Assembly (NCBI RefSeq): GCF_000143415.4
Contig: NW_003314342.1
Coordinates: 581,569 to 645,568, forward strand
Origin: Selaginella moellendorffii
Lineage: Eukaryota; Plantae; Lycopodiophyta
DNA: 64,000 nucleotides
Direction of reading: 5' to 3'
Part shown: positions 17,554 through 58,866 of the stretch, piece by piece
Position numbering within the stretch: the stretch's first letter is position 1
Layout of the letters: each line of letters begins with the position of its first letter
The notes under the pieces: model-generated
Told to the model about the DNA's origin: nothing
Seen by the model: the letters and a program-made list of their open reading frames with translations, nothing else
Databases searched by the model: none
Position numbers and translations under genes: made by a program

Positions 17554-18725
17554 ATGGTGTCGACGGGCAATCCAGAGAGGTAATCTCAAGCTCGCGCCAT
17601 CGTTTCCAAGCAATCGATGGATCCTTCTCGTGTTTCTTTCCAGAATGTGGTGGTCCAAGGACACAATCGTGCTCGTCACCGGCGCGAACAAGGGTATTGG
17701 CTTGCAGTTGGTGCGTGAGCTCGCCAGGCGAGGATTGACGACGATACTCACGTCTAGAGACGAATCCAGCGGCAGGAAGGCTATCGAATCGCTGCTGGAA
17801 GAGGGCATTGATCGAGAAAGGCTCGTGTATCACCAGCTCGACATCACTAGCCCCGATTCGGTCGACGCGCTGGCGGATTGGGTCTCTCGCTCCTACGGTA
17901 GCATCGAAATTCTTGTGAGTAGAGATCTAGAGCTCGAATTTCGCTGTTTCTCTAGCCGTCCAGCAGATAGTTCTTTGTTTTCTTCCTTGGTGTTCTTCCA
18001 GATTAACAATGCCGGCGTGAACTCAATTGGAGTGCCGGACTTGGAGCAAGCGAAGTACGTGGTGGAAACGAATTACTACGGCACGAAGAGAGTGATCGAG
18101 GCTATGGTCCCTCTTCTCAAACCTGGAGCTCGAATCGTTAACGTCAGCTCCAAAGCTGGTGATCTCGCGGTAAGTTCCTCGCGAATATCGATGAGAAACC
18201 TTGGAGATTCTTATGGTTTTTGCACCGCAGTATCTAAAGAACGAATGGAATGCAAAGCTGGAAGATATCGCCACTCTCACGCCCAGCAAGATCGACGAGA
18301 TGATCCAGGAGTTCTTCCGAGCAGTGGAAGCCAAAGAGATCAAAGCCCGCGGCTGGCCGTGCATGGGCGAGGAGCTCCCGCTAGCGCCACCAGAGATGCT
18401 CGCCGGCTACTCCCTCTCCAAGATCGCTCTCAACGCCTACGCGAGGATCATCGCGGAGAAGCTCGCGAGGGAGAAGGAGATCTTCCTCAACTCGATGTGT
18501 CCCGGCTCGACCAGCACGGCCATGTCGGGATTCAGGGGTCACTCGGTCGAGATTGGAGCCGACACCGCGGTGTGGATCGCTTTGCTTCCTCCGGGAACTC
18601 CGGAAGAACCACTTCCTCACGGGAGATTCTTCATGGATCGCAAGGACGTGGGATTCTCGCAGATGCCAGTCTTCTACGATGGCCAGTTCTACAAGAGCTT
18701 GGGAGAACTCCCGAAAAGCAAATAA
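17554..18725 (+). CDS. Short-chain dehydrogenase/reductase (carbonyl reductase / neomenthol dehydrogenase-like); introns 17580-17643, 17915-18001, 18170-18230
   Basis: WWSKDTIVLVTGANKGIG Rossmann motif, INNAG, NVSS, catalytic YSLSK, CPG. Confidence 0.9.
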
Positions 18726-18780
18726 ACATTATTTTCAAACTGTCTCTACTGGCGCCAGGAGCTAGGGTTTGATCCAAGCT

Positions 18781-20482
18781 ATGGTGGATCTACTGAGGAG
18801 CCGCTGGCTGATGCTAGTGGCGGGCATTTGGATCCAGATCACGATGGGATCCACCTACGTCTTTGGATTGTACTCGGAGAGCCTCAAGCGCGAGCTGGGA
18901 TTCGATCAATCGCAGCTCGACACGCTAGGGTTCTTCAAGGGGATCGGCGCCAATGTGGGGATTCACACAGGATTGCTGCTCTCGCTGGCGCTGCCGCCGT
19001 GGATTATCCTGGCGCTGGGGGCGGGCCAATGTTTTCTGGGCTATTTCATGATCTGGCTCGCTGGAACGCACAGGATCCGGGGCGTCCAGCTCTGGCAGAT
19101 GTGCGCCTTCATGCTCGTCGCTGCGAATTCGCAGACGTATTCCAACACCGCCGTGGTCGTGACATCTGTGACGAATTTTCCCACCAGTCGTGGCACTGTG
19201 ATTGGCTTGATGAAAGTAAGTTCCATTTGATCAAAGCTCCATCAAAGCTACTCATTGTTCTAGTTCTAAATGCTTGCTCCAGGGATGCTTGGGATTGAGT
19301 GGAGCCATTCTAACTTTCTTCTATCGATCGCTATGCGGGGAAGATGGTGGCAGCCAGATTCACTACACGCTCTTTGCGGCGGTAGTCCCGACAGTGGTAT
19401 GTGTTTTGCTTATGCTTCTCATTAGGCCAGTGGCACCGTCGACCATCACGCATGATCCACACGAGAACACGAACATCTCCAGGATCTCTGGGATCATCGT
19501 GGCACTCGCGTTTGGTCTCATTCCTCTCACGCTTCTCACTCCAGTGGGCCGAGTCGCGAGGATTTTGCTGTGCGTTCTACTGCTTCTAGCGCTCGCATCG
19601 CCACTACTGGTGGCATTCAAGGCAAGCAGGCTCACAAAGACGGTGGATTCCAAAGAACAGGGACAAGAGAACGTCGCGATACTCCTTGGAGAATCTAGCA
19701 GCGGCGCCAACTTTCAGGAAAAGCCCGAGAACGAGAAAAGAGGAACTTTAGTTCTTCGCAGCCAAGACTTTACACTCTCACAGGCTTTTACATCGCTCGA
19801 GTTTTGGCTACTGGTCACAGCAATGGCCTGTGGGATGGGATCGGGAGCCACAGTGATCGACAACGTGAACCAGCTTGGATCCTCACTGGGCTACTCCACA
19901 CATAACATAGCAGTGGTGGTGTCGCTGGTTAGCATCTGGAACTTCCTGGGCCGGTTTGGAGCTGGAGCACTCTCGGACTTCTTCCTCAGGGTGAGGGGTG
20001 TTCCAAGGCCGGTTTTCAACTCGATCACTCTGGGAGTCATGGCAGCCGGGCACCTTGTACTGGCGGCAGCGTTCCCGGGTGCTTTGTACGTGGGAACTCT
20101 CCTCGTTGGGCTGTGCTACGGCTCGCAGTGGTCGCTCATGCCAGCAACAGTGTCGGAGATCTTCGGCATGAAAGAGTTTGGGACGCTCTTCAACACCATC
20201 GCCGTGGCAAGCCCACTGGGAGCTTACATTCTCTCAGTGAGAGTGGCGGGCTACTTCTATGACAGGGAAGCGCAGAGGCAACAAAGCCATAGCCATGGGA
20301 GCTCGATCCATTCTCTGCCAAATTCTTGCCACGGTCCAGCATGTTTCAGGCTCACCTTTCTCGTGCTCGCTGGAGTCTGCCTCTTGGGCTGCGTTTGTAC
20401 GTCACTGCTCGTATCAAGGACGAGGAAGTACTACAAAGAAGCTCACAAGACCCTCTACCATAGCAAAAGCTGGCAAAAGTAA
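18781..20482 (+). CDS. Nodulin-like MFS transporter (NFD4-like); intron 19216-19282
   Basis: RWLMLVAGIWIQ..GSTYVFGLYS, NFPTSRG, EFWLL, SIWNFLGRFGAGALSD, SEIFG, CHGPACFR. Confidence 0.93.
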
Positions 20483-23870: not shown

Positions 23871-26106
23871 AAAAGTTGCAAGTTGAATACTGATTCTAAG
23901 AGTGTTTGGTTAATGGACATGTCAAACATGTAAAAAGTAGTTCACTATTGCAAATGATTGAATAGAGCCTGAAAAAATGTTGCAATTGGATATAAACCAT
24001 TCTAGGGGTGAGAGTAGAGTTTGAAGATTTACCTTTTAGTTCAAAGTAAAATCCTTTCCTTGTTTAGTTTGTGCTTGCTTTTTTTTTTCTTCTTTTTTGC
24101 GATCTTTTGTTTTATATTGGTCCTTGACCTCGTGGTCTATAGTAACTGTTCACTTGATAAGCTGGAAAAAATTCTGAAGACGAGTCATCCACCATTTGCA
24201 TGGACATTTCCACTGAGTGTACGGGAATGTGTTCCTGTCCAAATGATGGTGATGCCAATTGAGCTAGCAACTTCTTTTGCCTTTGTTGATGGTAGTGAGA
24301 ACAGTAGCCATCATCTTCGTGATGTCTTGCATGCAGGTTTCCAATGATGATGTCAATTTCTACTGCACTGAGAATGCAAAGGTAGAGGAAGATGATCCCA
24401 TCTCAATCAAGTACTTCCGCCCCTGAGTTTCCTCCTCCAATATTGCAGCCTCCACCATCATACTTCCTTGCGATGTACTTTCCGAGCCAGATCAGGATGC
24501 AACTGTAAGCTCTCACCACCCCTAAACTCGTTGCATCAACACCCTTATCCTTGCATTTAGAACCGCTGGTTGAATTGCCTAAGAGACTCTTGGGGTTGTT
24601 GGCGGATGAGATCAAGCTCCTCCGCCATCACATGATCTTTGCTCTCTAGTATTTCAAAAGAGTGAGGAAAAGCTTTGTGAAAGACTCAAAGTCAACTGCC
24701 TGGTGAGCTGCCACAAGAAAGCCTAACCAGAAAATGACAACCAAAAATATGCCATCTGTGAGTACTTAGGAATCGCCATCGCTGCTAGAAAGGACTTTAC
24801 ACTTTCCACATGCACCAAGTCTCCTCTGAATGTTAGGAGGATTGCTACTATGTGTGCATCAAGAGCATTCCGTTGTCTTGGGGCCAACATCGGTCTTGTG
24901 TTTCGTTTCCTTGCAAGTGGCAAAGAGCAGATTTCTTGAAACGGTCAGTTAGAGATATGGCCAGTTTTGGAGCGAGTTGACACCAGTACAGGAAATCACG
25001 CCCTCCCCCTCAGCGTCCCGTCCCAGGGCAGTTCATGAAGTCCTGTACGCATGCAAGGGCATGCAAGCTCTGATCTATCTTTCAGCCTTTATTCCCGTAC
25101 GTTGTCTTACTCCTCTATCACAACTCGTCCTTGTAGAAACTCACAACTGTAAATACCTCAAACCTAGAGAGTGGCTTGATGAATGGATTGCAATTTAATT
25201 GTGCTTTTCTGCCTCTTCTGCTCAACTCCATTTTGTTCCTCTTTCCTACACTCTAGTGGAAGAGAAAGACTGTCATCACCCTTAAAAGTTTCATGACCAA
25301 TCCTCCTTTTTAGCACGCAAATTTGAGAAGCGAAGTCAAAAGCTTGCCACCGCTCTTGCTCAGATGTTTGCGAGGTGTGAGTGATCACTGCCCAGTGCCG
25401 ATGCTGTCTTTTGGCAAATCCCTCCACTCCACAAGGACGTCCGCTTTCTGTCGACCTCAGCGCTGTCAAGTGTCCAACAAGTTTTGATCCGATTCTTGTG
25501 ACCATTATCTTGGCTTCTTCCAAGTGACTCTCTCTAGACGATCGCAATGGTCGCTTGGAGCTCTGCTCATTCAATGGAAGATAACGATGGCTCCCTGCCA
25601 TTCTTCAAGTCCAAGGCGATCACGATGCCTCGCTGCAGTTCAAGGCGATCTGGACAAGCGATCAAACTTCGGGAGGCCTCAAACCAGCCCAAGAGCGTCG
25701 TGGAGTTTTCAGTCCGCCCTGTGAACGTCGAGGCATGTCGAGTTTCTTGCCTTCTATGTCCATACTTCCGCCCCAGAGCTCGAAATCTTCCTGGAAAAAT
25801 CAGCTTACAAGCCGAAACATCGCCGATCCATCATACCTCGACACCCTTATAATCGTTGATAAGCGAGAAGAAAAAGCTTTTGTTACCTGTATGAACAGTA
25901 GCAGTAGCCTTCTTTATGTTACCAAATCCTTGGCTCTATATTCCTCTTTGTCTTCCAATGACGTTTCATTATCTTGACAAAGGTTTTGGCGACGTCAAGT
26001 TTGACAGTCTTCCTGCTACAGTTCAGAGTAGAGTAATGGAACGCGGATTCTAGAAATGATAGGCACTCACCTCTTCCTTCTTCCTCATCCATTCTCACTC
26101 TTTCCC

Positions 26107-29100
26107 ATGGCAAGAGCTTTGATGTTTGTCGCCTTACAGTGGATGTTCCTGGATTCGCTTCTGGCAGCGTCTACAGCGGAGATCTCGGCTATCAGAGACA
26201 TTGCCTCCGCCCTAGGAGTGCCGGCCACGGTCTGGAACACGAGCACGGATCCCTGCAGTGGAAGATGGAGGGGAATCAGCTGCTGCAACGCACAACGAGT
26301 GAACTCTACCTGCTGTTCCTCCATCTACAGTCCGTTTGAAAGCACCCTTTGTCCAGACTCCTCCTCCGCAAACTCGTCCACCATCGTCGGAGTGTCTCTC
26401 GACTCCAATTCCATCATGCGAGTGTTGAGTGGTTCTCTCCCCGATTCCGTCTGTAATTTGACGTCATTGGTTACTCTGGATCTCAACAACAACAACTTAC
26501 AAGGCCCGATTCCTCGCTGCATCGGAATCCGGCTGACACGGCTCAAGAAGCTCGGGATGGCTGGAGGTGCAGGGAACCTCGGAACCATTCCGGAGGAGCT
26601 CGGGAGCTTGAGCAGCTTGGAGCAGCTTTACCTGGATAACACCAACTTGACCGGGCCAATCCCAAGCTCTTTCGGAGGTATGACAAGCCTGCAGCAGCTG
26701 GATATTAGATACAATAGATTATCAGGAAGGATTCCATTGGAGCTGGGAAGGTTGTCTAACCTCGTGGAGCTGGGAATTCAAGTGAACAGCTTGGAAGGTG
26801 GCATCGAGGCCGTGGCCAGCTTGACACGCCTCGAGACTTTGAGAGCCTTTAACAACCATTTTTCCGGGAACTTGAGCCTGTCCATCTTCCGGAACCTGTC
26901 AAGCCTGAGGGTGTTGAATCTCAAGCTAAACAACTTCACGGGTGGCATACCTGAGCTCGATGAAAGATTTGTCAATCTAACTCATCTCGACTTGAGCTTC
27001 AACCAGTTCTCCGGCGGCATTCCAGGCTCCCTGGTTAGACTCCCTTCTCTCACACATCTCTTCCTCGGCCACAACAATCTTTCGGGAGCCATTCCTTCTT
27101 CACCTCCGCCGGCTCTCCAGGTTCTGGATGTCTCCCACAATTCTCTCAGTGGCTCCTTGCCGAATCTACCACAGCAGCTGCAAGTCGACTTCTCCTTCAA
27201 TTCCCTTAACTCGGTCTCTTCTTCAGCTGGTGGAAACGGGCAAGGATACTTCAACTGCATCGCTCCCGGACTTTCATGCAACCGGTCACTGCCTGGAAGA
27301 TCCACTTCATTCGCGGTTCGCGTAGGTAGCTCCGAGGACTTGACGAACAGGGACGGTACTCTCTTTCGCAGTGACGGTTTTGCACGAAACTCCACAGGTC
27401 TCCACTACTTGGAAGCTGACAGAAACTGGGCGCTGGAACTCTCGAGTGAATTCAGCAGCACGGTGACATTCCCAGCAACGATCAGTGGAGTACCTCCCGA
27501 GGACAATTCCTCTCTCTATCAAACCATGAGGTGGTCATCTTCCTATCTTGCCTACCATGGTGGCAACCTGGCTCCTGGAACTTACAGCGTCTCACTGTAC
27601 TTTTGCGAGACTGTCTTCACCAACGCGAGCTATCGAGCCATGGACGTCGTGGTTCAAGGTGAAGTGATCGCTAGGCAGCTCGACGTTGTGAGAGAAGTTG
27701 GACCCCGGACAGCGTACAAGATCACCAGGAACGCCACGGTCACTGATGGAAGCTTGTCCATCGAGTTCATCTTCACCGGGCCCGACCGCTACATCAATCC
27801 AAACATCTTCCGACTCGCGCCACAATCTGGAGCAATGGTGTCTGCCATCTCGGTAAGATCCTTCGATCACGTAGACTCTCTGGGCAGTAATTCCTCGAGA
27901 ACCTGGAAGGTAGCAGTAGCAGCGTCAGTCTCCGCAGCAGCTGCTGCCATCGCAGTTATCATCATCGTCGCCATCTTCTTTTGCAAGAGATCCAGGAAGA
28001 ACTTTCGGGCAAAGAGTTTTTCTATCTACAGTGACACCGTTGGGATCAAAGTCTACAGCTACAAGGAACTCTACGAGGCAACCGATGGATTCAATCCAAC
28101 GAAGAAGCTCGGGCAAGGAGGATTCGGCAGCGTCTACGTGGGGAACTTGCAAGACCAAACTCTAGTCGCAGTCAAGCAACTCCTCCATCAAACCCAGCAA
28201 GGCCGGGAGGCTTTCCGGAAAGAAATCCGGATTCTAAGCAGCGTCCAGCACAGGAATCTCGTGGCAGTGAGAGGATACTGCCTCGAGGCCGAGCATCCAA
28301 TGCTGGTATGCGACTACATGCGCAACGGAAGCCTAGACCACTTCCTACACGGGAGCAGGGGATTTCTCACCTGGAATCAGCGCCGGAAGATCGCGATCGA
28401 CACCGCATTTGGCCTGGCGTACCTCCACGATGAATCCAAGCACCGGATCATCCACTGCGACCTCAAACCGCCAAACATCCTCCTGGACGACGATCTGATG
28501 CCGCGCATCGCGGATTTCGGCATGGCGCGGCTGTACGAGGAGGGAAAATCGCACGTCACGGCCACAAAAATGGGAGGGACGATCGGCTACCTCGCCCCAG
28601 GTAAGAAGAAAGAACGGATTTCTAGGGTTCTTGATCTAGGGTTTATTGATATTTCTTCTCTCGCAGAGTACGCGATGCACTACCAGCTCTCCGACAAGGC
28701 GGATGTCTACAGCTATGGCGTGGTGCTGCTGGAGATTATCAGCGGCCGGCGGGCGATCGATAGCGCGGCGCCTCGCGAGGAGGTGGTTTTGGTGGATTTT
28801 GCGCAGAGCTTGGCGTCGATCTCGACGCTGGAGCTTGTGACGCTGCTGGATAAGAAGCTGGAGGGGGAGGGAGGGGAGATTAGCGTGGCAGAGGTTGTAG
28901 ATATGGCTAGGGTTGCTGTGCTGTGCACGCTCGAGAATCCATTGCTGCGGCCGAGAATGCGGGCCGTGTGGCTCATGCTCAAGGGTACGATGGAGATTCC
29001 AGACATTCCCGCGATGCTGGACACCAGGTATAACGCCGTCAGGGCGCTCATGAGTGCTTACGAGCGATCGCAAGCAACGAGTGATTGCGCTGAGGCTGTT

Positions 29101-29118
29101 CTTCTCAGCCCGCGATAG
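26107..29118 (+). CDS. LRR-malectin receptor-like kinase 1 (non-RD); intron 28601-28666
   Basis: Signal peptide, Cys-rich cap, ~11 plant LRRs, malectin (LYQTMR, YSVSLYFCE, MDVVVQG, VSAISV), TM, kinase GQGGFG / VAVK / HCDLKPPN / DFG. Confidence 0.93.
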   Translation: MARALMFVALQWMFLDSLLAASTAEISAIRDIASALGVPATVWNTSTDPCSGRWRGISCCNAQRVNSTCCSSIYSPFESTLCPDSSSANSSTIVGVSLDSNSIMRVLSGSLPDSVCNLTSLVTLDLNNNNLQGPIPRCIGIRLTRLKKLGMAGGAGNLGTIPEELGSLSSLEQLYLDNTNLTGPIPSSFGGMTSLQQLDIRYNRLSGRIPLELGRLSNLVELGIQVNSLEGGIEAVASLTRLETLRAFNNHFSGNLSLSIFRNLSSLRVLNLKLNNFTGGIPELDERFVNLTHLDLSFNQFSGGIPGSLVRLPSLTHLFLGHNNLSGAIPSSPPPALQVLDVSHNSLSGSLPNLPQQLQVDFSFNSLNSVSSSAGGNGQGYFNCIAPGLSCNRSLPGRSTSFAVRVGSSEDLTNRDGTLFRSDGFARNSTGLHYLEADRNWALELSSEFSSTVTFPATISGVPPEDNSSLYQTMRWSSSYLAYHGGNLAPGTYSVSLYFCETVFTNASYRAMDVVVQGEVIARQLDVVREVGPRTAYKITRNATVTDGSLSIEFIFTGPDRYINPNIFRLAPQSGAMVSAISVRSFDHVDSLGSNSSRTWKVAVAASVSAAAAAIAVIIIVAIFFCKRSRKNFRAKSFSIYSDTVGIKVYSYKELYEATDGFNPTKKLGQGGFGSVYVGNLQDQTLVAVKQLLHQTQQGREAFRKEIRILSSVQHRNLVAVRGYCLEAEHPMLVCDYMRNGSLDHFLHGSRGFLTWNQRRKIAIDTAFGLAYLHDESKHRIIHCDLKPPNILLDDDLMPRIADFGMARLYEEGKSHVTATKMGGTIGYLAPGKKKERISRVLDLGFIDISSLAEYAMHYQLSDKADVYSYGVVLLEIISGRRAIDSAAPREEVVLVDFAQSLASISTLELVTLLDKKLEGEGGEISVAEVVDMARVAVLCTLENPLLRPRMRAVWLMLKGTMEIPDIPAMLDTRYNAVRALMSAYERSQATSDCAEAVLLSPR

Positions 29119-29485
29119 AAGTGGTATGGATCAAACAGGAGTTCTCACTTACCTTGTTCAGTCTTGAGAAGCGATTTGATTGATAGTTTTTGACACAATC
29201 AAACCAGAAGTTTCGCAAGCTACTGGATGGGAGCTTGCGTAGCTTGAACGATCAGAAGAAGTTTCTAAGCATGACAAGCTATCAACGCTGCCGAAAAGTT
29301 GCAGAAGGTATGAACTAGTTCTACTTAGTGTAGTTGGGACCATCGATTTACTCGACTCTCTTTCAGGAGTTTCCGTGCAACGACGCTGTGGGACTCCGCC
29401 GCAACAGAAGGACATATAGAAAATGGATAAGTTGTCTCAAAGGGACCTGAAAAGGCACTCTTTTTGAGCACAGCAGCCGAATAGA

Positions 29486-29621
29486 AGTCAATCCCGGCGA
29501 GCTCTTCCATTTTCTACTGGTATTCGGAACAGGAACCAGCCAGCAACCTGTGCGCTGTATCAGCCAACCAGGATAAGCAGCGTTTTATTTGCGAGTCAAG
29601 AAATATTGATTTGCGAGTCAA
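29486..29621 (-). promoter_or_regulatory. Three W-boxes (TTGACT) upstream of RLK2; two arise from a local duplication of atttgcgagtcaagaaat
   Basis: AGTCAA at 29486, 29594 and 29616; homologous sites at 33395 and 33503 upstream of RLK3. Confidence 0.5.
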
Positions 29622-29812
29622 GAAATACAGGTGAGTGCTTGGAGTTCTACTCAATCACGTTAATTGATTCGTCTTTCAGGTGGAAATCCGAGTAAGCGAG
29701 CAATGAACGTCACAGGGGCCTTTGCTGACGTACCGCAAAAATTAACAGTAGCAGCAGAGATGAGCGTAAAAAGGAGGAACAACTTAGCAGAAGAAGATGG
29801 ATGTAATCAGCG

Positions 29813-32800
29813 ATGTGGGGAAGCGTATCATGGACGATTGTGTCCATTTGGTTTCTTCGAATCACAGACGCGGCAAGTGTTTTGGAGACTACAAGCTTGA
29901 TTGCAGCAGCTTCAGTGCTGGGCATTGCTCCAGGGACATGGAACTTCTCCACGGATCCGTGTGTAGGGGGATGGACAGGTGTAGGCTGCTGCAGGAACAA
30001 CTCACGGGCTCTGTGCTGCGCATTCCCGCAAATCTATCCAGCGACACCACCGCTGACACCGTGCGAGCGGACAGCAGACGCTCAAGTCTCGACTTTGATC
30101 CTCCGGTCTGATCTCTTCGGCAACCAGCTCCTCAACGGAACACTTCCGGAAGCTCTGTGCAACCTTACGTCTCTGAGGATTCTGGACGTGGGCTTCCAGC
30201 GTCTGCGTGGACAAGTTCCAGGATGCATTGGCAGCAGATTGAGCAGCCTGCAAATCCTCCGTATGGGTGAGAACAGATTCAGTGGCAGCATTCCCGAAGA
30301 GCTAGGCGAATTGAGAAGTCTCCAGCAGCTTTTTTTGGATACAACAAATATCTCGGGTCCCATTCCTGCGTCTCTGGGAAGGCTGAGCAACCTCACCAGT
30401 CTCAGCCTCTGGAGCAATGCGCTTGAAGGTGATCTTCCCGAGGAGATCGGCCAGCTGAGTAACTTAGTCGCGCTCTCGCTTCAGGGAAACAGGCTTACTG
30501 GACGTATTCCTGACAGCTATGGCAACCTTGCCAACTTGCGAATCTTGAGGCTTTTCAACAATGAGCTCTCTGGAGGTATCAGCTCGTCGGTCTTCCAAGG
30601 CATGACTTCTCTCACGTATGTGAGCTTGAGACACAACAGGTTCAGCGGTCCTATCCCGGATTTTGGCGTCGGGTTCAGCTTGAGCACGGTTGACTTGGGA
30701 TTCAATGAATTCTCGGGGCCACTGCCGGGTTCTCTTGGAGGTCTTTCTTCCTTGACAAGCTTGTTCATCGATCACAACAGGCTCAATGGCAGTATTCCGG
30801 ACAGCTTTGGTTCTTTACCTGCGTTGGCCCAACTGGATATCTCACACAACATGCTCGGGGGGTCCTTACAGTCGCTAGGAGGGAACACTCAGCTCATGCA
30901 GTTGGATGTTTCCTTCAACTTTTTCAACATCTCTAGCGCTCCAGCATCCGTCCCGCAGCAGCCAAACCTCAACGCTTACTTCAACTGCGTCCCTTCCGGT
31001 TCTTCTGGCACTTGCTCCAGCTCGCCTCCCGGTGGAAGGCCTTTCTTCGCTGTCAATGCTGGTGGCAATGCTTTAAGCAGCACTACAGGCAGCAGGGTCC
31101 AGGTAGCATTCGATTCGGACGCAAATTCAAACAATCAGAGCGTGGGATTTTTCTATGGATCAGGACCAGGTTTATGGGCTTTAGAAGTTTCGGGCAGTGA
31201 AGGTGGTACACTTGCGTTCCAAGGCTTCATCAATATGACCGGTGCTGGGGGTACGGAGGAGGGGCTCTACCGAAGCATGCGTTGGTCTTCCTCTTACATC
31301 GGATATCACGGTTATTCTCTAAGACCAGGAAACTATACAGTGATGCTCTACTTTGCCGAGCTTGTGTTCACGGAGCCGGGATACAGGATCTTCGACGTTG
31401 TCCTCCAAGGAAGAGTTGTGTGGGAGAACCTGGACATTGCTAGAGAAGCTGGAGCTCAAGCAGCGTACGTGATGAGTCGTAACATCACCATCAACAACAG
31501 TGGCAGCGTTTCGGTCGAGCTGGTTTACAAGGGTCGAGATAGATTCTCATTAAATCTCGGTCCCTGGGCAGTGAGAAACCCCGGCCCGATTGTCTCGGCA
31601 ATCTCAGTCGTTTCAGTCGACTACAGGGGCGAGGGAGGGAACTCGACGTCTTTGAGCTCGGGCCAGATAGCCGGGATAGCACTTGGAAGTGGAGCAGCCT
31701 TGCTCATCCTCGTAGCGTTGCTAGTGTATATATGCAAAGGCAAGCGTGCTGGGGTAGCAGCTTCGACTACAACGAATGGTCCTACAAACCAGCAAGCCTC
31801 TCTCCTGGATGCTGGGGGCATTTTCACATACCAGGAGCTCCATGACGCTACAGGAGGCTTCAATGACAAGCTCGGAGAAGGAGGATTTGGAGCTGTGTAC
31901 AAGGGGACACTCCCAAACGGGACTGTTATCGCTGTGAAACAGCTCGTCAAGCACTCTCAACAGGTTGAGGAGGATTTCAAGCGAGAAATTTCCATCATCA
32001 GCAAAGTCCGCCACCGGAACTTGCTGGCAGTGATTGGCTACTCTCTTGAGTCGGACGTCCCGATGCTCGTCTGCGAGTTTATTCCCAATGGGAGCTTGGA
32101 TAAGTGGCTATTTCGTCGGCGTGAGAGTGCTTTGAGCTGGGAGGCTAGAAGAGCGATCGCGATCGGAGTTTCTTGTGGGCTTGCCTACTTGCATGACGAG
32201 TCCAACCTGAGGATCATACACTGCGATGTGAAGCCCGCCAACATCCTTCTCGACGAGGATTTCAATCCCCGGCTCGCAGACTTTGGGCTGGCAAGGTTGT
32301 ACGACGAGAGGGAGTCTCATGTCACGGCGACGAGATTGAAAGGCACGGCAGGCTATCTAGCACCAGGTAAGCTTGAGTTTCTCTTCTCTTTGGATTGTGC
32401 TTGATTTTTCTCTTTTGATGTTCTCGTAGAATACGCCATGCAACTCCAGCTCTCGGACAAAGTTGACGTATACAGCTTTGGGGTGGTGTTGCTGGAGCTC
32501 TTGAGCGGGAGGCGTGCAGTGGAGCTCTCGGCTCCCTCGGAACAGATCGTTCTTGTGGACTGGGCTCACAAGGAGGCCGAGATCCCAGCGAACTTGCTGG
32601 ACATCGTGGACAGGAAGCTACAGGGGGGCTTTGTGGAGCAGGAGGCCAGGGACATGGCCAGCATCGCCATCCTTTGCACGCAACGCTCGCCGGCGCTGCG
32701 TCCAAAGATGCAGGCAGTGTGGCTCATGCTCACGGGCGCGGTCAAGGTTCCAGAGTTCTTGGAGAACTTGACGGCAGTCATCCCTTCTTCTTCCGGAGGA

Positions 32801-32929
32801 TCGACGAGCCAGACCTTGAGTTCTGGGAACTTGTCGGAGACGTCAATCGCGGCATTTAGATCTTTGCGAGTCTTTGGGAGGGTTGCGAGTCCGGAGAGCT
32901 TTTCTTCCTCGAAGGCCGTGACACAGTAG
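29813..32929 (+). CDS. LRR-malectin receptor-like kinase 2 (non-RD); intron 32367-32429
   Basis: Same architecture; YTVMLYFAE, RIFDVVLQG, HCDVKPAN; splice restores YLAPEYA. Confidence 0.93.
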
Positions 32930-32987
32930 AGGCTACAAGCTAAAACTCCGTGCATGTTTCATGCAAGCTTTCAGTTGTGGCTAAGAG

Positions 32988-33060
32988 CACGATGGGGATT
33001 CCAGACATTCCAGCGATGCTGAAGATCTTCTCCTTAGCCCGCGATAGAAGTCCATGGATC
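32988..33060 (+). pseudogene. Relic of the RLK1 3' end carried in the RLK2/RLK3 duplication unit
   Basis: cgatggggattccagacattccagcgatgctg..cttagcccgcgatagaagt matches 28988-29125 with an internal deletion. Confidence 0.8.
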
Positions 33061-33723
33061 AAGCAGGAAGTGTTATTTCTCACGCCAGTTTCCATGGGAA
33101 GCGATTGATTGGATGGTACAATACTCGCTATCAGCTTGCGATCAGAAGAAGGTTCCAAGCATGAGCAAGCACAAGCTATCAACTCGTCTCTCCTTGCCGA
33201 AAATACGGTGTCAATGCAAAAGGTATGAACTCTTCCTGGCGTAGTTATTCCTGGGGACCATATCTGGTGGACTTCTTTGCAGGCGTTCGCTATGGACTCC
33301 GCCGACAGAAGTTGCTCGTCTCGGGATTTCGAAAGGGACAAGGATATCAATGAAAAGTTTCACTCGTTTTGCGCTCAGCAGCCGAGAACGTGGAAGTCAA
33401 GTCCGTCAGCCAGCCAGAGCTCTTCCAATTTCTACTGGCACTGAGGAAAGGGACCGGCCAACAACGTATAGGATAAGCAGCTCTTGTGGGGTCTGATTTG
33501 CGAGTCAAGAAACACACAGGTCAGTGAGTCCTATTCTATCACGTTAATTGATTGTGTCTTTCCAGTGTAATTCGAGGACGCCAGCGAAGACCGTCACGCG
33601 GGCCCTTGCTGATGTGTATGGAAGACAATGGCAGCGGACAAAAGTACCGTGTAAAGATTGAAGCAGAGATAAGCGCAAGATCGGGATCACCTTAGTAGCA
33701 GAAGAGATGTTCTGCCAACAGCG

Positions 33724-36700
33724 ATGTGGAGAAGCGTATCATGGCTTTCGACGATTCTGCCCATCTGGTTTCTTCGCATCACGGACGGGGCAAGTGTTTT
33801 GGAGACTACAAGCTTGATTGCAGCAGCTTCAGTGCTGGGCATTGCTCCAGGGACATGGAACTTCTCCACGGATCCGTGTGTAGGGGGATGGACAGGTGTA
33901 GGCTGCTGCAGAAACACCTCAGACGCTCTATGCTGCGCATTCCCGCAAATCTATCCGCCGACACCACCGCTGACACCGTGCGAGCGGACAGCAGACGCTC
34001 AAGTCTCGACTTTGATCCTCCGGTCTGATCTCTTTGGCAACCAGCTGCTCAATGGCACTCTTCCGGAAGCTCTGTGCAACCTTACGTCTCTGAGGATTTT
34101 GGACCTGGGCTTGCAGCGTCTGAGTGGTCAAATTCCAGGATGCATTGGCAGCAGATTGAGCGGCCTGCAAATCCTCAGGATTGGCGACAACAGATTCAAC
34201 GGGAGCATTCCGGAAGAGCTAGGCGAATTGAGAAGTCTCCAGCAGCTTTTTTTGGATACCACAAACATCTCGGGTCCCATTCCTGCGTCTCTGGGAAGGC
34301 TGGGCAACCTCACGAATCTCAACCTCCGGAGCAATGCGCTCGAGGGTGATCTTCCCGAAGAGATAGGCCAGCTGAGCAACTTAATCGAGCTCTCGCTTCA
34401 GGTAAACAGGCTTACTGGAAGTATTCCTGATAGCTATGGCAACCTTACCAACTTGCAAACCTTCAGGCTTTTCAACAATGAGCTCTCTGGAGGTGTCAGC
34501 TCGTCAGTCTTGCAAGGCATGGCTTCTCTCACGGATTTGAGCTTGAGGCACAACAGGTTTAGCGGTCCTGTCCCGGACTTTGGCCTCGACTCGAGGTTGA
34601 GCACGGTCGACTTGGGATTCAATGAATTCTCGGGGCCACTGCCGGGTTCTCTTGGAGGTCTTTCTTCCTTGACAAGCTTGTTCATCGGTCACAACAGGCT
34701 CAATGGCAGCATTCCGGACAACTTTGGTTCTTTTCCTGCGTTGACTCAACTGGATATCTCACACAACATGCTCACCGGGTCCTTACAGTCTCTAGGAGGG
34801 AACACTCAGCTCACACAGTTAGATGTTTCCTTCAATTTTTTCAACATCTCTAGCGCTCCAGCATCCGTCCCGCCGCAGCCAAATCTCGGCTCGAACGCTT
34901 ACTTCAACTGCGTCCCTTCTGGTTCGTCTGGGACTTGCTCCAGCTCGCCTCCTGGTGGAAGGCTTTTCTTCGCTGTCAATGCTGGTGGCAATGGTTTAAG
35001 CAGCACTACAGGCAGCACGGTCCAGGTAGCATTCGATTCGGACGCAAATCCAAACATGGGATTTTTCTATGGATCGGGACCAGGTTTATGGGCTTTAGAG
35101 GTTTCCGGAAGTGAAGGTGGTACACTTCCGTTCCAAGGCTTCATCAATATGACCGGTGCTGGGAATACAGAGCAGGAGCTCTACCGAAGCATGCGTTGGT
35201 CTTCCTCGTACATCGCATATCACGGGTATTCTCTAAGACCAGGGAACTATACAGTGATGCTCTACTTTGCCGAGCTCGTGTTCACGGAGCCGGGATACAG
35301 GATCTTCGACGTTGTCCTCCAAGGAAGAGTTGTGTTGGAGAACCTGGACATTGCGAGAGAAGCTGGAGCTCGAGCAGCGTACGTGATGAGTCGTAACATC
35401 ACCATCAACAACAGTGGCAGTGTTTCGGTCGAGCTGGTTTACAGGGGTCGGGACAGGTACTTGGATATTGGTCCATGGACGTTGAGAAACTCCGGCCCGA
35501 TTGTCTCGGCAATCTCAGTCGTTTCGGTCGACTACAGGGGCGAGGTAGGAAACTCAACGTCTTTGAGCTCGGGCCAGATAGCGGGTATAGCACTTGGAAG
35601 TGGAGTAGCCTTACTCGTCCTCATAGGGTTCCTTGTGTATATATCCCGTAGAGGCAAAGGCAAGCGGGCTGGCAGAGCAGCTTCGACTACATCAAGGCGT
35701 TCTACAGACCAGCAAGCCTCTTTCCTGGATGCTGGCATTTTTACGTACCAGGAGCTCCATGATGCTACTCAAGGTTTCAGTGACAAGCTCGGGGAAGGAG
35801 GATTTGGAGCTGTGTACAAGGGGACACTCCCAAGCGGGACTGTTATCGCTGTGAAGCAGCTCGTCAAGCACACTCAACAGATTGAGGATGATTTCAAGCG
35901 AGAGATTTCCATCATCAGCAAAGTCCGTCACCGGAACTTGCTGGCAGTGATTGGCTACTCTCTTGAGTCGGACGTCCCGATGCTCGTCTGCGAGTTTATT
36001 CCCAATGGGAGCTTGGATAAGTGGCTGTTTCGTCGGCGTGAGAATGCTCTGAGCTGGGAGGCTAGAAGAGCAATCGCGATTGGAGTTGCTTGTGGGCTTG
36101 CCTACTTGCACGACGAGTCCAAGCCGAGTATCATACACTTGGACGTGAAGCCCGGCAACATCCTTCTCGACGAGGATTTCAATCCCCGGCTCGCAGACTT
36201 TGGGCTGGCAAGGCTGTACGACGAGAAGGAGTCTCATGTTACGGCAACGAGATTGAAAGGCACGGCCGGATATCTAGCACCAGGTAAGCTTGAGTTTCTC
36301 TTCTCTTCGGATTGTGCTTGATATTTCTGTTTTGATCTTCTTGTAGAATACGCCATGCACCTCCAGCTCTCGGACAAAGTTGACGTATACAGCTTTGGAG
36401 TGGTGTTGCTGGAGCTCTTGAGCGGGAGGCGTGCAGTGGAGCTCTCGGCTCCCTCGGAACAGATCGTTCTTGTGGACTGGGCTCACAAGGAGGCCGAGAT
36501 CCCAGATAACTTGCTGGACATCGTGGACAGGAAGCTACATGGGGACTTTGTGGCGGAGGAAGCCAGGGACATGGCCAGCATCGCCATCCTTTGCACGCAA
36601 CGCTCGGCGGCGCTGCGTCCAAAGATGCAGGCTGTGTGGCTTATGCTCACGGGAGCGGTCAAGGTTCCAGAGTTCTTGGAGAACTTGTCGGCGGTCCTTC

Positions 36701-36849
36701 CTTCTTCTTCCGGAGGATCGACGAGCCAGAGCGTGAGCTCTGGGAACTTGGCGGAGTCCTCAATCAGCGCGGCATTTCGATCTTTGCGAGTCTTTGGGAG
36801 GGTTGTGAGCCCGGACAATTTTTCTTCCTCGAAGGCCGTGACACAGTAG
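33724..36849 (+). CDS. LRR-malectin receptor-like kinase 3 (non-RD, HLD), recent paralog of RLK2; intron 36284-36346
   Basis: Collinear and highly similar to RLK2; catalytic loop HLDVKPGN. Confidence 0.93.
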
Positions 36850-36916: not shown

Positions 36917-38075
36917 TCATTTCTCGATTCCTCCAGCGATCACGGACAGCAGATTGTTGCCGAAAGGATCACTGAGATGAGTCGTCAAGTTCTCCACGGG
37001 ACCCTCGCCAGTCGCGTAAGCTTGGATGAAAAATCCCAGCATTGCAAACATTGCCAATCTCCCGTTTTTAATCTCCTTTACTTTGAGTAGAGCGAAGTTG
37101 TCTGGGTCCTTTGCGAGGCCCAAAGGATCGAATGGACCTCCCGGGTGGAGCCTGTCCAATCCCTGCCAGGTTCTCCCAAGTTGTTTCAAAATCTTTCTAA
37201 AGAACTTTGGTTTCTTACCAGGTTGTTTATCGATCTGTAGTACTCAGCTCCTCCAACAAGGATCACCTCGGCAAGAACAGCCAGGACGAGGTTGATTGGA
37301 ATGTTTGCTCCGAAGTAATTCAGCGTGCCACCGTCGAGAAGCAGTGCTCCAGTCTAGAGGATAAAAGCAAAGATCTAAAAGCTCTCGAGAAAGTTTGCTA
37401 GAACAAACCTTGAACCACACTGCCTCGGGGCCACACTGTGCTCCAAACTTGTTGAAAGCCTCGGGAATAACAAATCCAGCAGCGCCGAGCATCGCCCATC
37501 GAGCGTGAATGAGTTCGTAGGCTTGATATCTAGAAGAAAAAAGATCAATCGAAAAGAAGGAACGATTTGCATGGATGTTTCTTACTTGTCGAAGTCCGCT
37601 GGCTTCTTGCTCAGTCCAAATGGATCAAAGCCATAGCTGCGAGAAGAAAGAGCTACGTTTGGATCCCAAGCCTTTCGTGGAAAGCAAAGAAGAACTTACT
37701 CTCCAGGAACTTCTCCTGTCAAGTACTCTGGCACGTCCGATCGATCGAGAATTCCCTCGGGGAGATAGATCCTTCTCGACTCCCCTGGAAAATCCAATCC
37801 CAAAGATTTAAATCTCCCAAGAATTGCGATGGACTTGGGCAATGGAGAGAAGAGATTTCCAGCAATGTAGATGCTAGGGCTCTTGGAAGGAACTCACCAT
37901 ACCACTTCGCGAGCTCATCGTTGGCTGGAGCTGGCGCTTTGGCCTTGGGCTTGGCGGCCTTCTTCTTCTTTAGCAGTGCCTGGACTGTGGATGATCTACT
38001 GCTCCTTCCGGCGACTGGCAAGGCGCCCGCTACCACTGCTCGTCCCAGAATCTCGGGCCTCGCCAAAGCCGCCAT
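36917..38075 (-). CDS. LHCB5: Chlorophyll a/b-binding protein CP26, multi-exon
   Basis: Transit peptide, [74 protein letters not shown]. Confidence 0.95.
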
Positions 38076-45270: not shown

Positions 45271-46105
45271 ACTATTTGCCACTTTCAACAGGTCCTCTTA
45301 ACCAACGGGGGTTGAAACTTTATCACTTTGAAAAGTTCTGTGGGGTTTGTCCCGGAATCGCATGTGGAAGGGTGGGGTCCTTGCTTGTTCCTTTCTTCAT
45401 TGGTAAACATCGCCATGGCTTTTTAAGCAAGTGGATTTTGCGGTGATTCTTGTTGTCTAGCATGTGGTCAAGGGTCAGCGACCCCATTTACTAGTCAACC
45501 CGAGGCACAATTATTTGACTGGAAGTACTGACCACCATTGCACCTTAGCAATCACAGAAGAGCATTCTTTCCAGGCAGAAGGAAGTTTGGCTTATATATA
45601 GTTGAAATTAACCTCATTTGTGATCAAGGTTTAATGGTAATACTCTTACTTGTGCAAGAAGATCTCATGTACACTCTTGCTAAACAAGCAAGAATAAAAT
45701 GCCACTGTCCCAAAGTTGATGGGTGAATTAGAGAATGAGTTAGAGCAACTCCAATATATGAGCAGACCATAACTTGATTATAGGGCGAGAAGCTGGATGG
45801 TGTCTTTTATAAGGTGGTTCACCCTTTGCAACAACCAGCTATAGGTCCATTTTTAAATTTTCAAATCTGCCAAAAAGCAGAACTTAATACTCATTAACTC
45901 TAGCTCTATCAGTGAAAAGCTGGATGGCATGTTTTATAGGGTGATAATCAACCTTCATGACAGTCAACTCTAGATCCATTCCAAAAGCCTCTCCCAAATT
46001 TTAAAATATGAAATAGTCATTCACTTCAACTCCAAATATTGAGGACCCTTATAGAGATTTCATGAAAACTTATTGATTTAACTTTAGGTTAGCTTTAAAT
46101 CATTA
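45271..46105. repeat. ~0.83-kb diverged direct repeat, copy A
   Basis: Collinear with 47590-48437 from actatt..actttcaaca..gtcctcttaaccaacgggggttgaaact to agctttaaatcatt. Confidence 0.85.
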
Positions 46106-46114
46106 ACTCTGTGG

Positions 46115-47587
46115 TGCGGAAAATCACAGTAGTGAATGCTCTTGCTGGAAACTTCAAGAACTTTTGGTACAAGACTTCAGTAAAAAAAAGAGTAAATGGA
46201 GCCATAACACTGCATGTTGTCAAAAGAACCTGGACAGCTCGAAGTCATTGACCCGATACAACATAGAGAAAAGAGCACTTACACTGTACAGCGTTGACAA
46301 TGCGACACAACAGTCATGGTCTCCAGTACGTCCTTTCAACCTCTTGCGATTGAAACGAACGTAAATGTTTGTAAAATTATCAATAAACTTGAGAAGATAA
46401 GGAACCACCTGTTTTAAATAGGTGAACTCCATATATACAAAATTTTACTTACGGTGTATAGTCCCCTGATGAATTCACAAGACTTTGAGTAGAAGAATTT
46501 ATCCACCAATCCAGCGCGTTGTACCACGGAAGGAAAACATCTCTCACCTGAAAAATACACGTTTGTTCTTGATGATAGAAACGAAACCATTATCTTACCA
46601 CAGCATGCACCCCTCCTTACGGAATTTAAGAGGCTCTGAACTAACTACTGGCGAGTTTATGAGATACAATCGAGAAACATTACAACTGATAAACGCTCAC
46701 GTATTAAAGTAACACTTACTGCTCCATAGTCGTGTATAACGTCCATGGGAGGTGGATAGTTTTTCAACTATTTACTCATCTTCTTTCCGCTTCAGCAAGA
46801 ACAAGGCCATTGCAATAAATATATTCTGAGGGCAGGCTTGTCAAACAAAGCAGTCAACAAGACCATTAAGGTGTAAAACCTGCAAAAAGAAGCAATAATA
46901 AGCGATCGGAAGCATATTGTGTAGCGACTTGTACCATCCACGAGTTTGATCAAGGCCTTTAGCAACAAAATGACCAGGAAAGTTTTTATCGAAAAGCTCG
47001 CAATTTTCGAAAGGATAATGCGTATAAGCGTAAGGCATTGAACCGCTTTCAAACCAGCAGTCAAAAACCTATAAAAGAAGAAAGAAAATAAAACATTCCA
47101 CAACAGATTGAACTACTCACATCGTCAACTCGGTGCAAAACACCATAGCCAGTTTTAGAAGGAATAGTTATATCATTAATAAAATGCCAATGAATATCAG
47201 TTGCCTTCTTTGAGAAAAATAATGCAGAGCAAAAAAAAGATGAAATAAGCATACCTTATGACCGGATAGTTCCTCCAATTCCTTTCTGGAACCTACCACC
47301 ATCAATTCCTCACCATCACTGCTAGCCCAAATTGGTAAAGGTGTTCCCCAATCTCTAGCATTCTCAAGCCAATTATGAAAACGTTTTTCCTGAAAAGCCA
47401 AGGACAGTAAAAGTTATACAATCCTAAGGAACTTACTTTCACAAAATCTGGAACCCAGTACGTTTCAGCAGTATTTTGCAGCAATCGGTCTCAGAGCTCC
47501 TCAACCTTCACAAACCTGGAAAATAAAACTCCTTACTTACGCCACAAATTTATATACGAAGTTACCAGCTTGGAACAGCTTTGTAGA
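46115..47587 (-). pseudogene. Intron-retaining duplicate of the middle of IleRS (source ~40077-41728)
   Basis: High identity to the source exons and introns; TAG in KMSK* (46768-46770); 24-bp deletion of AVSRSRFW; other deletions. Confidence 0.93.
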
Positions 47588-47589
47588 GA

Positions 47590-48437
47590 AACTATTCACC
47601 ACTTTCAACATAGTCCTCTTAACCAACGGGGGTTGAAACTGTCACTTTGAAAGTTCTGTGGGGTTTGTCACGGAATCGGAATCGCATGTGGTAGGGTGGG
47701 TCCTTGCTTGTTCCATTCCTTTAGTGGTAAAACATCTCCATGGCTTTTTAAGTAGGTGGATTTTGCGGTGATTCTTGTTGTCTAGAAAATTACAGTTCTC
47801 AAATATTCACTTCTCTTTTTATGAAAGAAGATGGAATATTGGTGTCACCGATCCCATTTACTAGTCAACCCTAGGGATGCGAAGTACTGACCACCATTGC
47901 ACTTTAAGAAGAGAGTTTGGCTTTTATTAGTCAATCTAACAGTTGACTTTGTAATCAAGGTTTAATGGTAATATTCTTACTTTCATATAGCATGTACACT
48001 CTTGCTAAACAAGCAAGAATAGGCCAATCCAAAGCTAATGGATGCATTAGAGATCTAGTTAGAGCAACTCTAATCTTTGCGCAGACCATAACTTAATTAC
48101 AAGGTGAGAAGTTGGATGGAATCTTTTATAGGACCCTTGCAAGAATTATCTCTAGATCAAAACTAAATACTAAATACTCATGTCATTGACTCCAATTCCA
48201 TCAGGGTGAAAAGCTGGATGAGGGTGTTCACAAGGGTGTTCACTATAGTCAGCTCTAGATCCATTCCAAAAGTCTCTCCCAAAATTTAAAATTTAAAATA
48301 GACTCTAACTCCATCTTTGCTGCTTGCGGAATATTGAGGAGCCACCCCCACTCTTATAGAGATTTTATAAGAGAATACATAGAGCATTAACTAATTGATT
48401 TAAGCATGTAAATTTTATATTAGCTTTAAATCATTGA
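47590..48437. repeat. ~0.83-kb diverged direct repeat, copy B; short third piece at ~50605-50640
   Basis: See copy A; gtggtcaagggtcag..cccatttacta recurs at 45465 and 50607. Confidence 0.85.
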
Positions 48438-58682: not shown

Positions 58683-58866
58683 CTAAATTATTGGATTGCA
58701 AATTAAGATGATAATCTTGTGATTGTCAAAGATGGAAATTACAGTAAATTTTGTGAAATATTATCTATTGATGAAACTGTTGTGAGTGTACAATGTAGAA
58801 GATATAATTAAAAATATATAAAAACTTTATTTAATCCAGATAGATAGCTACTTTTGTGACTACTAA
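58683..58866 (+). pseudogene. CVNH copy 3, 3' part only (not in ORF track)
   Basis: LNYWIAN*DDNLVIVKDGNYSKFCEILSIDETVVSVQCRR aligns without gaps to copy 1 LNGCISNDDNNLVAAKNGNYRDSCGKPSVNGTVISVECTK; shares the ttttgtgact-ctaatt end. Confidence 0.78.

What the first reader, a model, noticed from the sequence alone, without database searches (positions are those of the whole stretch)
26107..36849. Tandem array of three non-RD LRR-malectin receptor kinases: candidate lineage-specific immune receptor family
Seen: all three kinases lack the Arg before the catalytic Asp (HCD, HCD, HLD), and each gene has a single intron in the kinase domain. Established: non-RD kinases are strongly associated with pattern-recognition receptors (FLS2, EFR, XA21), whereas angiosperm LRR-malectin kinases (LRR-VIII-2) are typically RD and very intron-rich. 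Inference: this may be an independently assembled class that joins an LRR plus carbohydrate-binding ectodomain to a non-RD kinase and may sense glycans or microbes.
Basis: partly seen in the sequence, partly recalled or inferred. Interest (0 to 1): 0.75.

Follow-up and report, generated by a model that had tools for sequence, protein, structure and literature searches.

The report
Selaginella non-RD LRR-malectin receptor kinases
Three neighbouring spikemoss genes encode intact cell-surface receptors of the LRR-malectin kind known from flowering plants (where some sense cell-wall sugars), but with an altered kinase catalytic loop and a stripped-down gene structure; a published survey had reported this receptor family absent from this plant.

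Summary
The window is Selaginella moellendorffii. It carries three tandem + strand genes, each encoding signal peptide, about 12 LRRs, a malectin domain, a transmembrane helix and a kinase. Catalytic loops read HCD, HCD and HLD. Each gene has one 63-66 nt phase-1 intron at GYLAP|EYAM.

The "independently assembled class" reading is not supported.
- The proteins align colinearly over their whole length with angiosperm LRR-VIII-2 receptors (32% identity, E 2e-125).
- Their malectin part finds only LRR-VIII-2 relatives among plant proteins.
- Kinase identity is highest to LRR-VIII-2 (44-50%, against 35-41% for LRR-XII).
- They share the VIII-2 APE-YAM motif.

They are still aberrant members.
- All 60 sampled angiosperm VIII-2 kinases are HRD.
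- VIII-2 genes have about 23 introns, none at AP|E.
- The single Selaginella intron sits exactly where the LRR-XI/XII kinase intron lies.
- Kinase trees cannot place the clade: AU tests reject neither VIII-2 nor XII.

Both haplotypes keep the non-RD residues. dN/dS between genes 2 and 3 is 0.33, so the genes are under constraint. Liu et al. 2017 reported VIII-2 absent from Selaginella, and the 2011 gene models were kinase fragments only.

Verdict: a new variant of a known kind, of moderate interest. An immune role is untested. The scan had not noted this family on other DNA.

The parts
26107..29118 (+). Gene 1, LRR-malectin receptor kinase, 981 aa (NCBI XP_024517011.1 = P0003). Exon 1 26107-28600, intron 28601-28666 (66 nt, phase 1), exon 2 28667-29118 including the stop.
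   Evidence: The open frame starts upstream at 26056; NCBI starts at the Met of MARALMF.
29813..32929 (+). Gene 2, LRR-malectin receptor kinase, 1017 aa (XP_024517010.1 = P0001). Exon 1 29813-32366, intron 32367-32429 (63 nt, phase 1), exon 2 32430-32929.
33724..36849 (+). Gene 3, LRR-malectin receptor kinase, 1020 aa (XP_024517009.1 = P0002). Exon 1 33724-36283, intron 36284-36346 (63 nt, phase 1), exon 2 36347-36849.
28453..28461 (+). Gene 1 catalytic-loop codons His-Cys-Asp (CAC TGC GAC): non-RD.
   Evidence: The allele P0461 has the same residues.
32219..32227 (+). Gene 2 catalytic-loop codons His-Cys-Asp (CAC TGC GAT): non-RD.
   Evidence: The allele P0454 has the same residues.
36136..36144 (+). 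Gene 3 catalytic-loop codons His-Leu-Asp (CAC TTG GAC): non-RD, two base changes away from the Cys codon.
   Evidence: The allele P0456 has the same residues.
27310..27771 (+). Gene 1 malectin domain (Pfam PF11721 best stretch).
   Evidence: residues 419-572 of the frame that starts at 26056, E 5.3e-21.
31046..31498 (+). Gene 2 malectin domain (PF11721 best stretch).
   Evidence: residues 412-562, E 3.1e-22. The best solved relative is the IGP1 ectodomain 9hhu/9hhx.
35110..35412 (+). Gene 3 malectin domain (PF11721 best stretch, core part).
   Evidence: residues 463-563, E 3.7e-22.

Best explanation
These are the Selaginella representatives of the LRR-malectin receptor kinase family (LRR-VIII-2, the family of Arabidopsis IGP1/CORK1, LMK1 and LIK1). 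The whole architecture was inherited: signal peptide, N-cap, about 12 LRRs, one malectin domain, transmembrane helix and kinase. In the lycophyte line the kinase diverged strongly. It lost the Arg of HRD once (to Cys, later Cys to Leu in gene 3). The gene also lost all of the roughly 23 ancestral introns, perhaps through a processed copy. It now carries a single short intron at a CAG|A site inside the APE codons, which happens to be the LRR-XI/XII intron site. An old duplication gave gene 1 versus the ancestor of genes 2 and 3 (59% kinase identity). A recent tandem duplication gave genes 2 and 3 (dS 0.16). Shown: the architecture, full-length homology, intact catalytic motifs, purifying selection and presence in both haplotypes. 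Inferred: the proteins are plasma-membrane receptors whose LRR-malectin ectodomain binds an extracellular ligand, most plausibly a glycan. As non-RD kinases they probably do not depend on activation-loop phosphorylation and signal together with partner kinases.
For: Architecture. The organism and NCBI's At1g56130/At1g56140-like names. One colinear full-length alignment to Nymphaea VIII-2, 32% identity, E 2e-125. The malectin-only search returns only LRR-VIII-2 among plant proteins. The only solved structure that aligns across both LRR and malectin is IGP1 (9hhu/9hhx). Among 646 kinase domains, the best single-domain relatives are VIII-2 at 44-50% identity, against 35-41% for LRR-XII, non-seed XII-like kinases included. 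FastTree places the clade as sister to VIII-2 plus Sphagnum (support 87). The AU test does not reject window plus VIII-2 (p 0.40). The Gly-loop region, activation segment and C-lobe are distinctly VIII-2-like, and nothing around the intron is XII-like. APE-YAM occurs in 46 of 53 VIII-2 kinases and in all three window genes. GxGxxG, the VAIK Lys, HxD, DFG and APE are intact. dN/dS is 0.33 between genes 2 and 3. Alleles on the second haplotype contig keep HCD/HLD/HCD at about 98% identity.
Against: The careful mixture-model tree does not put the clade with VIII-2. It joins it weakly (UFBoot 74, SH-aLRT 37) to a non-RD SD-2b/LRK10L-like group. With the catalytic-loop columns removed, the clade sits on the branch between the two RLK superclades, outside a VIII-2+SD-1+CRK split supported at 99/89. 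Family HMM scores do not discriminate. The single intron is not one of the four kinase introns shared by Nymphaea, Pistacia and Sphagnum VIII-type genes. It matches the LRR-XI/XII intron in both position and phase. My explanation therefore needs complete intron loss plus a coincident gain. No other lycophyte, fern or bryophyte LRR-malectin kinase could be sampled to break the long stem branch (0.5 changes per site).
Confidence: 0.62

Rival explanations
1. An old, separate receptor lineage. On this view the clade split off before LRR-VIII-2, SD-1 and CRK kinases diverged. It keeps an ancestral RLK gene structure (one AP|E phase-1 intron, as in LRR-XI/XII) and perhaps an ancestral LRR-malectin ectodomain. 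It would be a sister of VIII-2, not a degenerate member.
For: Trees place the clade at the base, between the superclades, and outside the 99/89-supported VIII-2+SD-1+CRK split. The intron position and phase are identical to LRR-XI and LRR-XII. Moss VIII-type genes already have the four VIII-type kinase introns and none at AP|E. Liu et al. found no VIII-2 in Selaginella by kinase classification.
Against: A long stem branch drifting towards the base is a familiar artefact. The AU test allows a VIII-2 grouping. Pairwise identity, APE-YAM and C-lobe similarity point specifically to VIII-2, not equally to SD-1 or CRK. No member outside Selaginella was found, though my searches could not have found distant ones reliably.
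Confidence: 0.22
2. A chimera. On this view an LRR-malectin ectodomain of VIII-2 type was joined by recombination or exon shuffling to the kinase, or the 3' gene body, of a non-RD LRR-XII-like or LRR-XI-like gene.
For: The genes are non-RD with Cys, as in most LRR-XII. They have the two-exon structure with the kinase intron at AP|E phase 1, exactly as in Capsicum and Hevea LRR-XII and Lotus LRR-XI. The AU test does not reject window plus LRR-XII (p 0.21).
Against: Kinase identity to LRR-XII is the lowest of all families compared (35-41%), lycophyte, fern and liverwort XII-like kinases included. The LRR-XII family HMM gives the lowest score. Segments on both sides of the intron are VIII-2-like, not XII-like. 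The residues after APE are YAM as in VIII-2, not YG as in XI/XII. The juxtamembrane region and kinase continue the same colinear alignment with VIII-2.
Confidence: 0.08
3. Decaying or inactive duplicates whose non-RD state only reflects relaxed constraint.
For: Gene 3 changed Cys to Leu by two base changes. The transmembrane/juxtamembrane stretch has dN/dS of about 1.15.
Against: All three reading frames are intact in both haplotypes. All catalytic motifs other than the Arg are kept. dN/dS is 0.24-0.43 in every domain of genes 2 and 3. The non-RD state predates the old split of gene 1 from genes 2 and 3, so it has been kept for a long time.
Confidence: 0.05

Closest known systems
LRR-VIII-2 / LRR-malectin receptor kinases of seed plants (Arabidopsis IGP1/CORK1 At1g56145, IGP3 At1g56130, IGP4 At1g56140, LMK1 At1g07650, LIK1 At3g14840)
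   Same: They share the domain order, with the malectin domain between the LRRs and the membrane. They have about 12 LRRs and no LRRNT_2 match. The full length aligns colinearly. They give the highest kinase identity (44-50%) and share the APE-YAM motif. The IGP1 ectodomain is the best solved relative spanning both domains.
   Different: The catalytic loop is HCD/HLD instead of HRD (0 of 60 angiosperm members are non-RD). There is one intron instead of about 23, and it is at a site where VIII-2 has none. The kinase is too diverged to be placed in the family by phylogeny. Whether the aromatic clamps of the IGP1 cellotriose pocket are kept could not be checked.
LRR-XII receptor kinases (FLS2, EFR, XA21 type)
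   Same: They are non-RD, mostly with Cys. They have a large first exon and one phase-1 intron exactly at GYxAP|EY in the kinase.
   Different: They have no malectin domain, many more LRRs and an LRRNT_2 cap (Pfam lists). Kinase identity is only 35-41%. The residues after APE are YG, not YAM.
Atypical grass CRKs with an exchanged kinase domain (Vaattovaara et al. 2019, PMC6368629)
   Same: This is a precedent for members of an intron-rich RLK family (five kinase exons) that occur as one- or two-exon genes with a different kinase character.
   Different: In the grass CRKs the kinase is demonstrably that of another family (L-type lectin kinases). Here the kinase remains most similar to the family that matches its ectodomain.

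Membership tests
LRR-VIII-2 (LRR-malectin RLK) | Domain order: signal peptide, LRRs, single malectin domain next to the membrane, transmembrane helix, kinase | tested here: met
   Pfam on exons by reference; colinear alignment with Nymphaea VIII-2 over residues 25-938
LRR-VIII-2 (LRR-malectin RLK) | Malectin domain homologous to that of VIII-2 members | tested here: met
   Among plant proteins the malectin-only search returns only LRR-VIII-2, at about 30% identity; two kinase-less malectin proteins from metagenome sources also scored. IGP1 9hhu is the best PDB match, E 5e-10.
LRR-VIII-2 (LRR-malectin RLK) | Kinase domain groups with VIII-2 in kinase phylogeny (the basis of Shiu-type classification) | tested here: inconclusive
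   FastTree gives a sister position (87). The careful IQ-TREE run does not group them. AU p 0.40 does not reject the grouping. Family HMM scores are nearly equal.
LRR-VIII-2 (LRR-malectin RLK) | Family gene structure: one LRR per exon, four conserved kinase introns (VYK|G phase 0, LF|G phase 1, GT|xGY phase 2, LLxW|A phase 0) | tested here: not met
   Nymphaea P0279 has 23 introns. Pistacia and Sphagnum relatives share the four kinase introns. The window genes have none of them and one at AP|E.
LRR-VIII-2 (LRR-malectin RLK) | RD catalytic loop (typical of the family, not formally defining) | tested here: not met
   HCD, HCD and HLD here, against HRD in 60 of 60 angiosperm members
LRR-XII (FLS2/EFR/XA21 type) | Non-RD kinase with a single phase-1 intron at GYxAP|EY | tested here: met
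LRR-XII (FLS2/EFR/XA21 type) | Long LRR ectodomain with LRRNT_2 cap and no other ectodomain module; kinase groups with XII | tested here: not met
   A malectin domain is present and there is no PF08263 match. Identity is 35-41% and the family HMM score is the lowest. AU p 0.21 means a grouping is not formally excluded.
Pattern-recognition receptors signalling through non-RD kinases (Dardick and Ronald class) | Non-RD IRAK/Pelle-type kinase on a surface receptor | tested here: met
Pattern-recognition receptors signalling through non-RD kinases (Dardick and Ronald class) | Demonstrated perception of a microbial or damage signal and a defence output | not testable with these tools
   No expression or binding data are available here. 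The RD relatives IGP1/CORK1, IGP3 and IGP4 do this for beta-glucan and xylan oligosaccharides.

The most novel reading that the evidence does not exclude
The trio is a relic of an old land-plant receptor lineage that combines an LRR-malectin ectodomain with a non-RD kinase and the LRR-XI/XII-type gene structure. That would imply one of two things. Either the LRR-malectin ectodomain predates the split of the VIII-2/SD-1/CRK kinases, or it was coupled to a different kinase early in vascular plants. In both cases non-RD glycan-type receptors existed in lycophytes independently of the LRR-XII immune receptors.
Probability: 0.25. Interest if true: 0.7.

Novelty: new variant of a known kind. Interest (0 to 1): 0.45.

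Why it matters
LRR-malectin kinases have recently been shown to be receptors for cell-wall-derived glycans in Arabidopsis (IGP1/CORK1, with a solved ectodomain). Their history outside flowering plants is poorly known. One systematic survey stated that the subfamily is missing from Selaginella (PMC5296948). This locus shows that the architecture is present in a lycophyte and conserved under selection. It comes in a form that breaks two family regularities at once: the RD loop and the intron pattern. That bears on three matters. It shows how kinase-based classification can miss diverged receptors. It gives a natural test of whether the RD to non-RD switch matters for a glycan-type receptor. It offers a clean case of near-total intron loss with an intron at a site used by another RLK clade.

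Tried and rejected
1. The whole exon 1 search and the kinase-region search were swamped, the first by LRR-rich proteins and the second by mis-fused multi-kinase proteins. They gave the organism but no neighbours.
2. The exhaustive profile search with the kinase part of exon 1 listed only multi-kinase proteins in its top 150. It shows only that no single-kinase protein other than P0001 and P0003 scores above about 275 bits. I re-ranked by single-domain score locally.
3. An all-against-all BLAST for clustering timed out. I replaced it with identities taken from an hmmalign alignment.
4. Family HMM scoring did not discriminate.
5. Foldseek and VIA-align on the AlphaFold model of the gene 2 ectodomain (pLDDT 71.8) returned only LRR ectodomains. 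The IGP1 entries did not appear, so the LRR-malectin arrangement was not tested structurally.
6. The IGP1 pocket residues (Trp146, Tyr196) could not be checked, because the IGP1 alignment over the LRRs was never printed and no IGP1-group full-length protein was in my sample.
7. Dardick and Ronald 2006 is not held in the library. The supplement of the fern receptor paper was cut before the Selaginella rows.
8. The LRR-XII origin of the kinase was considered and disfavoured.
9. Gene conversion around the intron was considered and found no support.

On spliced models: window exons were searched separately by reference. The full-length proteins I used were NCBI's own records P0001-P0003, taken by id. 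I did not submit a joined model of my own to any search. One local script concatenated exon coordinates, only to count codon changes.
Full report
**What is there.**
The window is from Selaginella moellendorffii, scaffold GL377646.1 of GCA_000143415.2. Between 26.1 and 36.9 kb lie three + strand genes, separated by only about 0.7-0.8 kb. Each has a large first exon and a short second exon. The introns are GT..AG at 28601-28666, 32367-32429 and 36284-36346. My splice sites reproduce NCBI's proteins P0003 (981 aa), P0001 (1017 aa) and P0002 (1020 aa) exactly.

Pfam, run on the exons by reference, finds LRR families, one Malectin domain (PF11721) and a protein kinase in each gene. The catalytic loops are HCD, HCD and HLD. 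GxGxxG, the VAIK lysine, DFG and APE are all intact. No other copy or fragment lies in the window.

**Are they real, working genes?**
A second scaffold (1.66 Mb) carries near-identical proteins for all three genes (P0461, P0454, P0456; about 98% identity). I read these as the other haplotype, which is an inference. They have the same HCD/HCD/HLD, so the non-RD residues are not sequencing errors.

Genes 2 and 3 differ at dS 0.16 with dN/dS 0.33. Every domain lies at 0.24-0.43 except the short transmembrane/juxtamembrane stretch. Gene 1 is an old paralogue, with 59% kinase identity and saturated dS. It shares both the Cys and the intron, so both features predate that duplication and have been kept since. 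Gene 3's Leu (TTG) is two base changes from Cys (TGC).

**What family?**
Three independent lines tie the whole protein to LRR-VIII-2, the LRR-malectin receptor kinases.
- A search with the malectin part alone returned, apart from the Selaginella proteins and two kinase-less malectin proteins from metagenome sources, only LRR-VIII-2 (At1g07650/LMK1-like and At3g14840/LIK1-like, about 30% identity). The best solved relative of that part is the Arabidopsis IGP1/CORK1 ectodomain (9hhu/9hhx), ahead of animal malectins. It is also the only solved chain that aligns across both LRR and malectin.
- Gene 1's protein aligns with a Nymphaea VIII-2 receptor in one colinear stretch, 25-938 against 51-957, at 32% identity and E 2e-125. 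The stretch runs from the "E-x-x-A-x-R-x-IA...WN-x-S-x-DPCS" cap to the end of the kinase.
- I extracted 646 kinase domains from all proteins fetched, and the best single-domain relatives are VIII-2 kinases (44-50% identity). The VIII-2 set had been fetched through its malectin domain, so this is not circular. LRR-XII kinases reach only 35-41%, including lycophyte, fern and liverwort XII-like ones. A sliding comparison shows that the Gly-loop region, the activation segment and the C-lobe are distinctly VIII-2-like. APE-YAM is shared with 46 of 53 VIII-2 kinases.

**Where they break the family rules.**
All 60 angiosperm VIII-2 kinases in the sample that showed a catalytic-loop motif are HRD. 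I fetched genomic loci and mapped introns by exact spliced matching.
- Nymphaea VIII-2 has 23 introns, with one LRR per exon at phase 2.
- Its four kinase introns are at VYK|G (phase 0), LF|G (phase 1), GT|xGY (phase 2) and LLDW|A (phase 0).
- The same four occur in a Pistacia At1g56140-like gene and in a Sphagnum LRR kinase of the neighbouring clade. None of these genes has an intron at AP|E.
- The Selaginella genes have none of those four introns. Their one intron, phase 1 between GYLAP and EYAM, coincides in position and phase with the kinase intron of two LRR-XII genes (Capsicum, Hevea) and an LRR-XI gene (Lotus).
- An SD-2b-type gene has no kinase intron.

**Kinase phylogeny.**
- FastTree on 390 domains puts the trio as sister to a VIII-2 plus Sphagnum clade (support 87).
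- A careful IQ-TREE run (LG+C20 PMSF, 75 rows) joins it weakly (UFBoot 74, SH-aLRT 37) to a non-RD SD-2b/LRK10L-like group.
- When the 13 catalytic-loop columns and four long rows are removed, that link disappears. The trio then sits on the branch between the two large RLK superclades.
- AU tests reject neither trio plus VIII-2 (p 0.40) nor trio plus LRR-XII (p 0.21).

The stem branch is long (0.5 changes per site).

**Reading.**
The most economical account is inheritance of the whole LRR-malectin-kinase gene. After that came fast kinase divergence, including the loss of Arg, then loss of all ancestral introns and appearance of one intron at a CAG|A site in the APE codons. The intron-loss and intron-gain steps are inferred. 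The coincidence with the XI/XII intron site is the weakest point and keeps two rivals alive. One is an old separate lineage that retains an ancestral structure. The other is a chimera with an XI/XII-type kinase, which the sequence comparisons disfavour.

**Function.**
Arabidopsis IGP1/CORK1, IGP3 and IGP4 are needed for responses to cellulose-, mixed-linkage-glucan- and xylan-derived oligosaccharides (PMC9563578, PMC11004201). The IGP1 structure shows cellotriose bound in the LRR groove, with the malectin domain shaping the pocket. Pocket residues vary widely among family members (bioRxiv 10.1101/2025.09.28.679030).

By analogy, the Selaginella proteins are surface receptors for an extracellular ligand, quite possibly a glycan. 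This is inference only. The known glycan receptors of the family are RD kinases, so the non-RD state is not needed for that role. Its link with immune receptors is a correlation that I cite from memory of Dardick and Ronald; that paper is not held in the library.

**Novelty.**
NCBI already names the genes At1g56130/At1g56140-like. Liu et al. 2017 state that subfamily VIII-2 is not present in S. moellendorffii (PMC5296948). The 2011 JGI models of these genes were 287-318 aa kinase fragments, which may explain that result. My literature searches found no description of non-RD LRR-malectin kinases. I rate this as a new variant of a known kind, of moderate interest.

**Method note.**
Window exons were searched separately, by reference. 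The spliced full-length proteins used were the database's own records, taken by id. A local script joined exon coordinates only for the codon counts.

Noticed in passing
window 28601-28666: The 66-nt intron of gene 1 is in frame and has no stop, so the mechanical ORF 26056-29118 reads straight through it. Intron retention would insert 22 residues inside the APE motif.
   Followed up: partly
L001 10001-17034 (window 29813-36846): NCBI isoform X2 (XP_002987408.2, P0455) is a hybrid model. It takes gene 2 up to residue 452, within the malectin domain, and splices it across 3914 nt to the matching point of gene 3. NCBI's gene ranges for the three genes also overlap. This is either read-through transcription of the array or an artefact of paralogue alignment.
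   Followed up: partly
window 26107-36849: The original 2011 annotation held only kinase fragments of these genes (EFJ11494.1 and EFJ11495.1, 287-318 aa). Surveys built on it would not have seen the LRR or malectin parts.
   Followed up: partly
window 4866-7232 (-), 8218-9498 (+), 10833-11804 (+), 17630-18772 (+), 19274-20482 (+): The upstream neighbours are ordinary plant genes: a KUP/HAK potassium transporter, a purple acid phosphatase, a cytochrome P450, a short-chain dehydrogenase and a nodulin-like MFS transporter (Pfam).
   Followed up: partly
window about 36917-38075 (-) and 38488 onwards (-): Directly downstream lie a chlorophyll a/b-binding protein gene and a class I aminoacyl-tRNA synthetase gene (called genes with Pfam in L001). 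Further on are a GT34 glycosyltransferase (54520-55740, -) and a UDP-glycosyltransferase (60181-61071, +).
   Followed up: no
window 46001-50000 and 56001-64000: These are AT-rich islands (GC down to 0.27) in an otherwise roughly 50% GC window.
   Followed up: no
L003 (Sphagnum compactum OZ234497.1): Many of the top kinase hits in the public protein sets are gene models that fuse two or more tandem kinase genes. One example is the 55-kb Sphagnum model P0126, which has introns of 28.5 and 11.9 kb. Such models inflate summed scores and distort rankings in kinase searches.
   Followed up: partly
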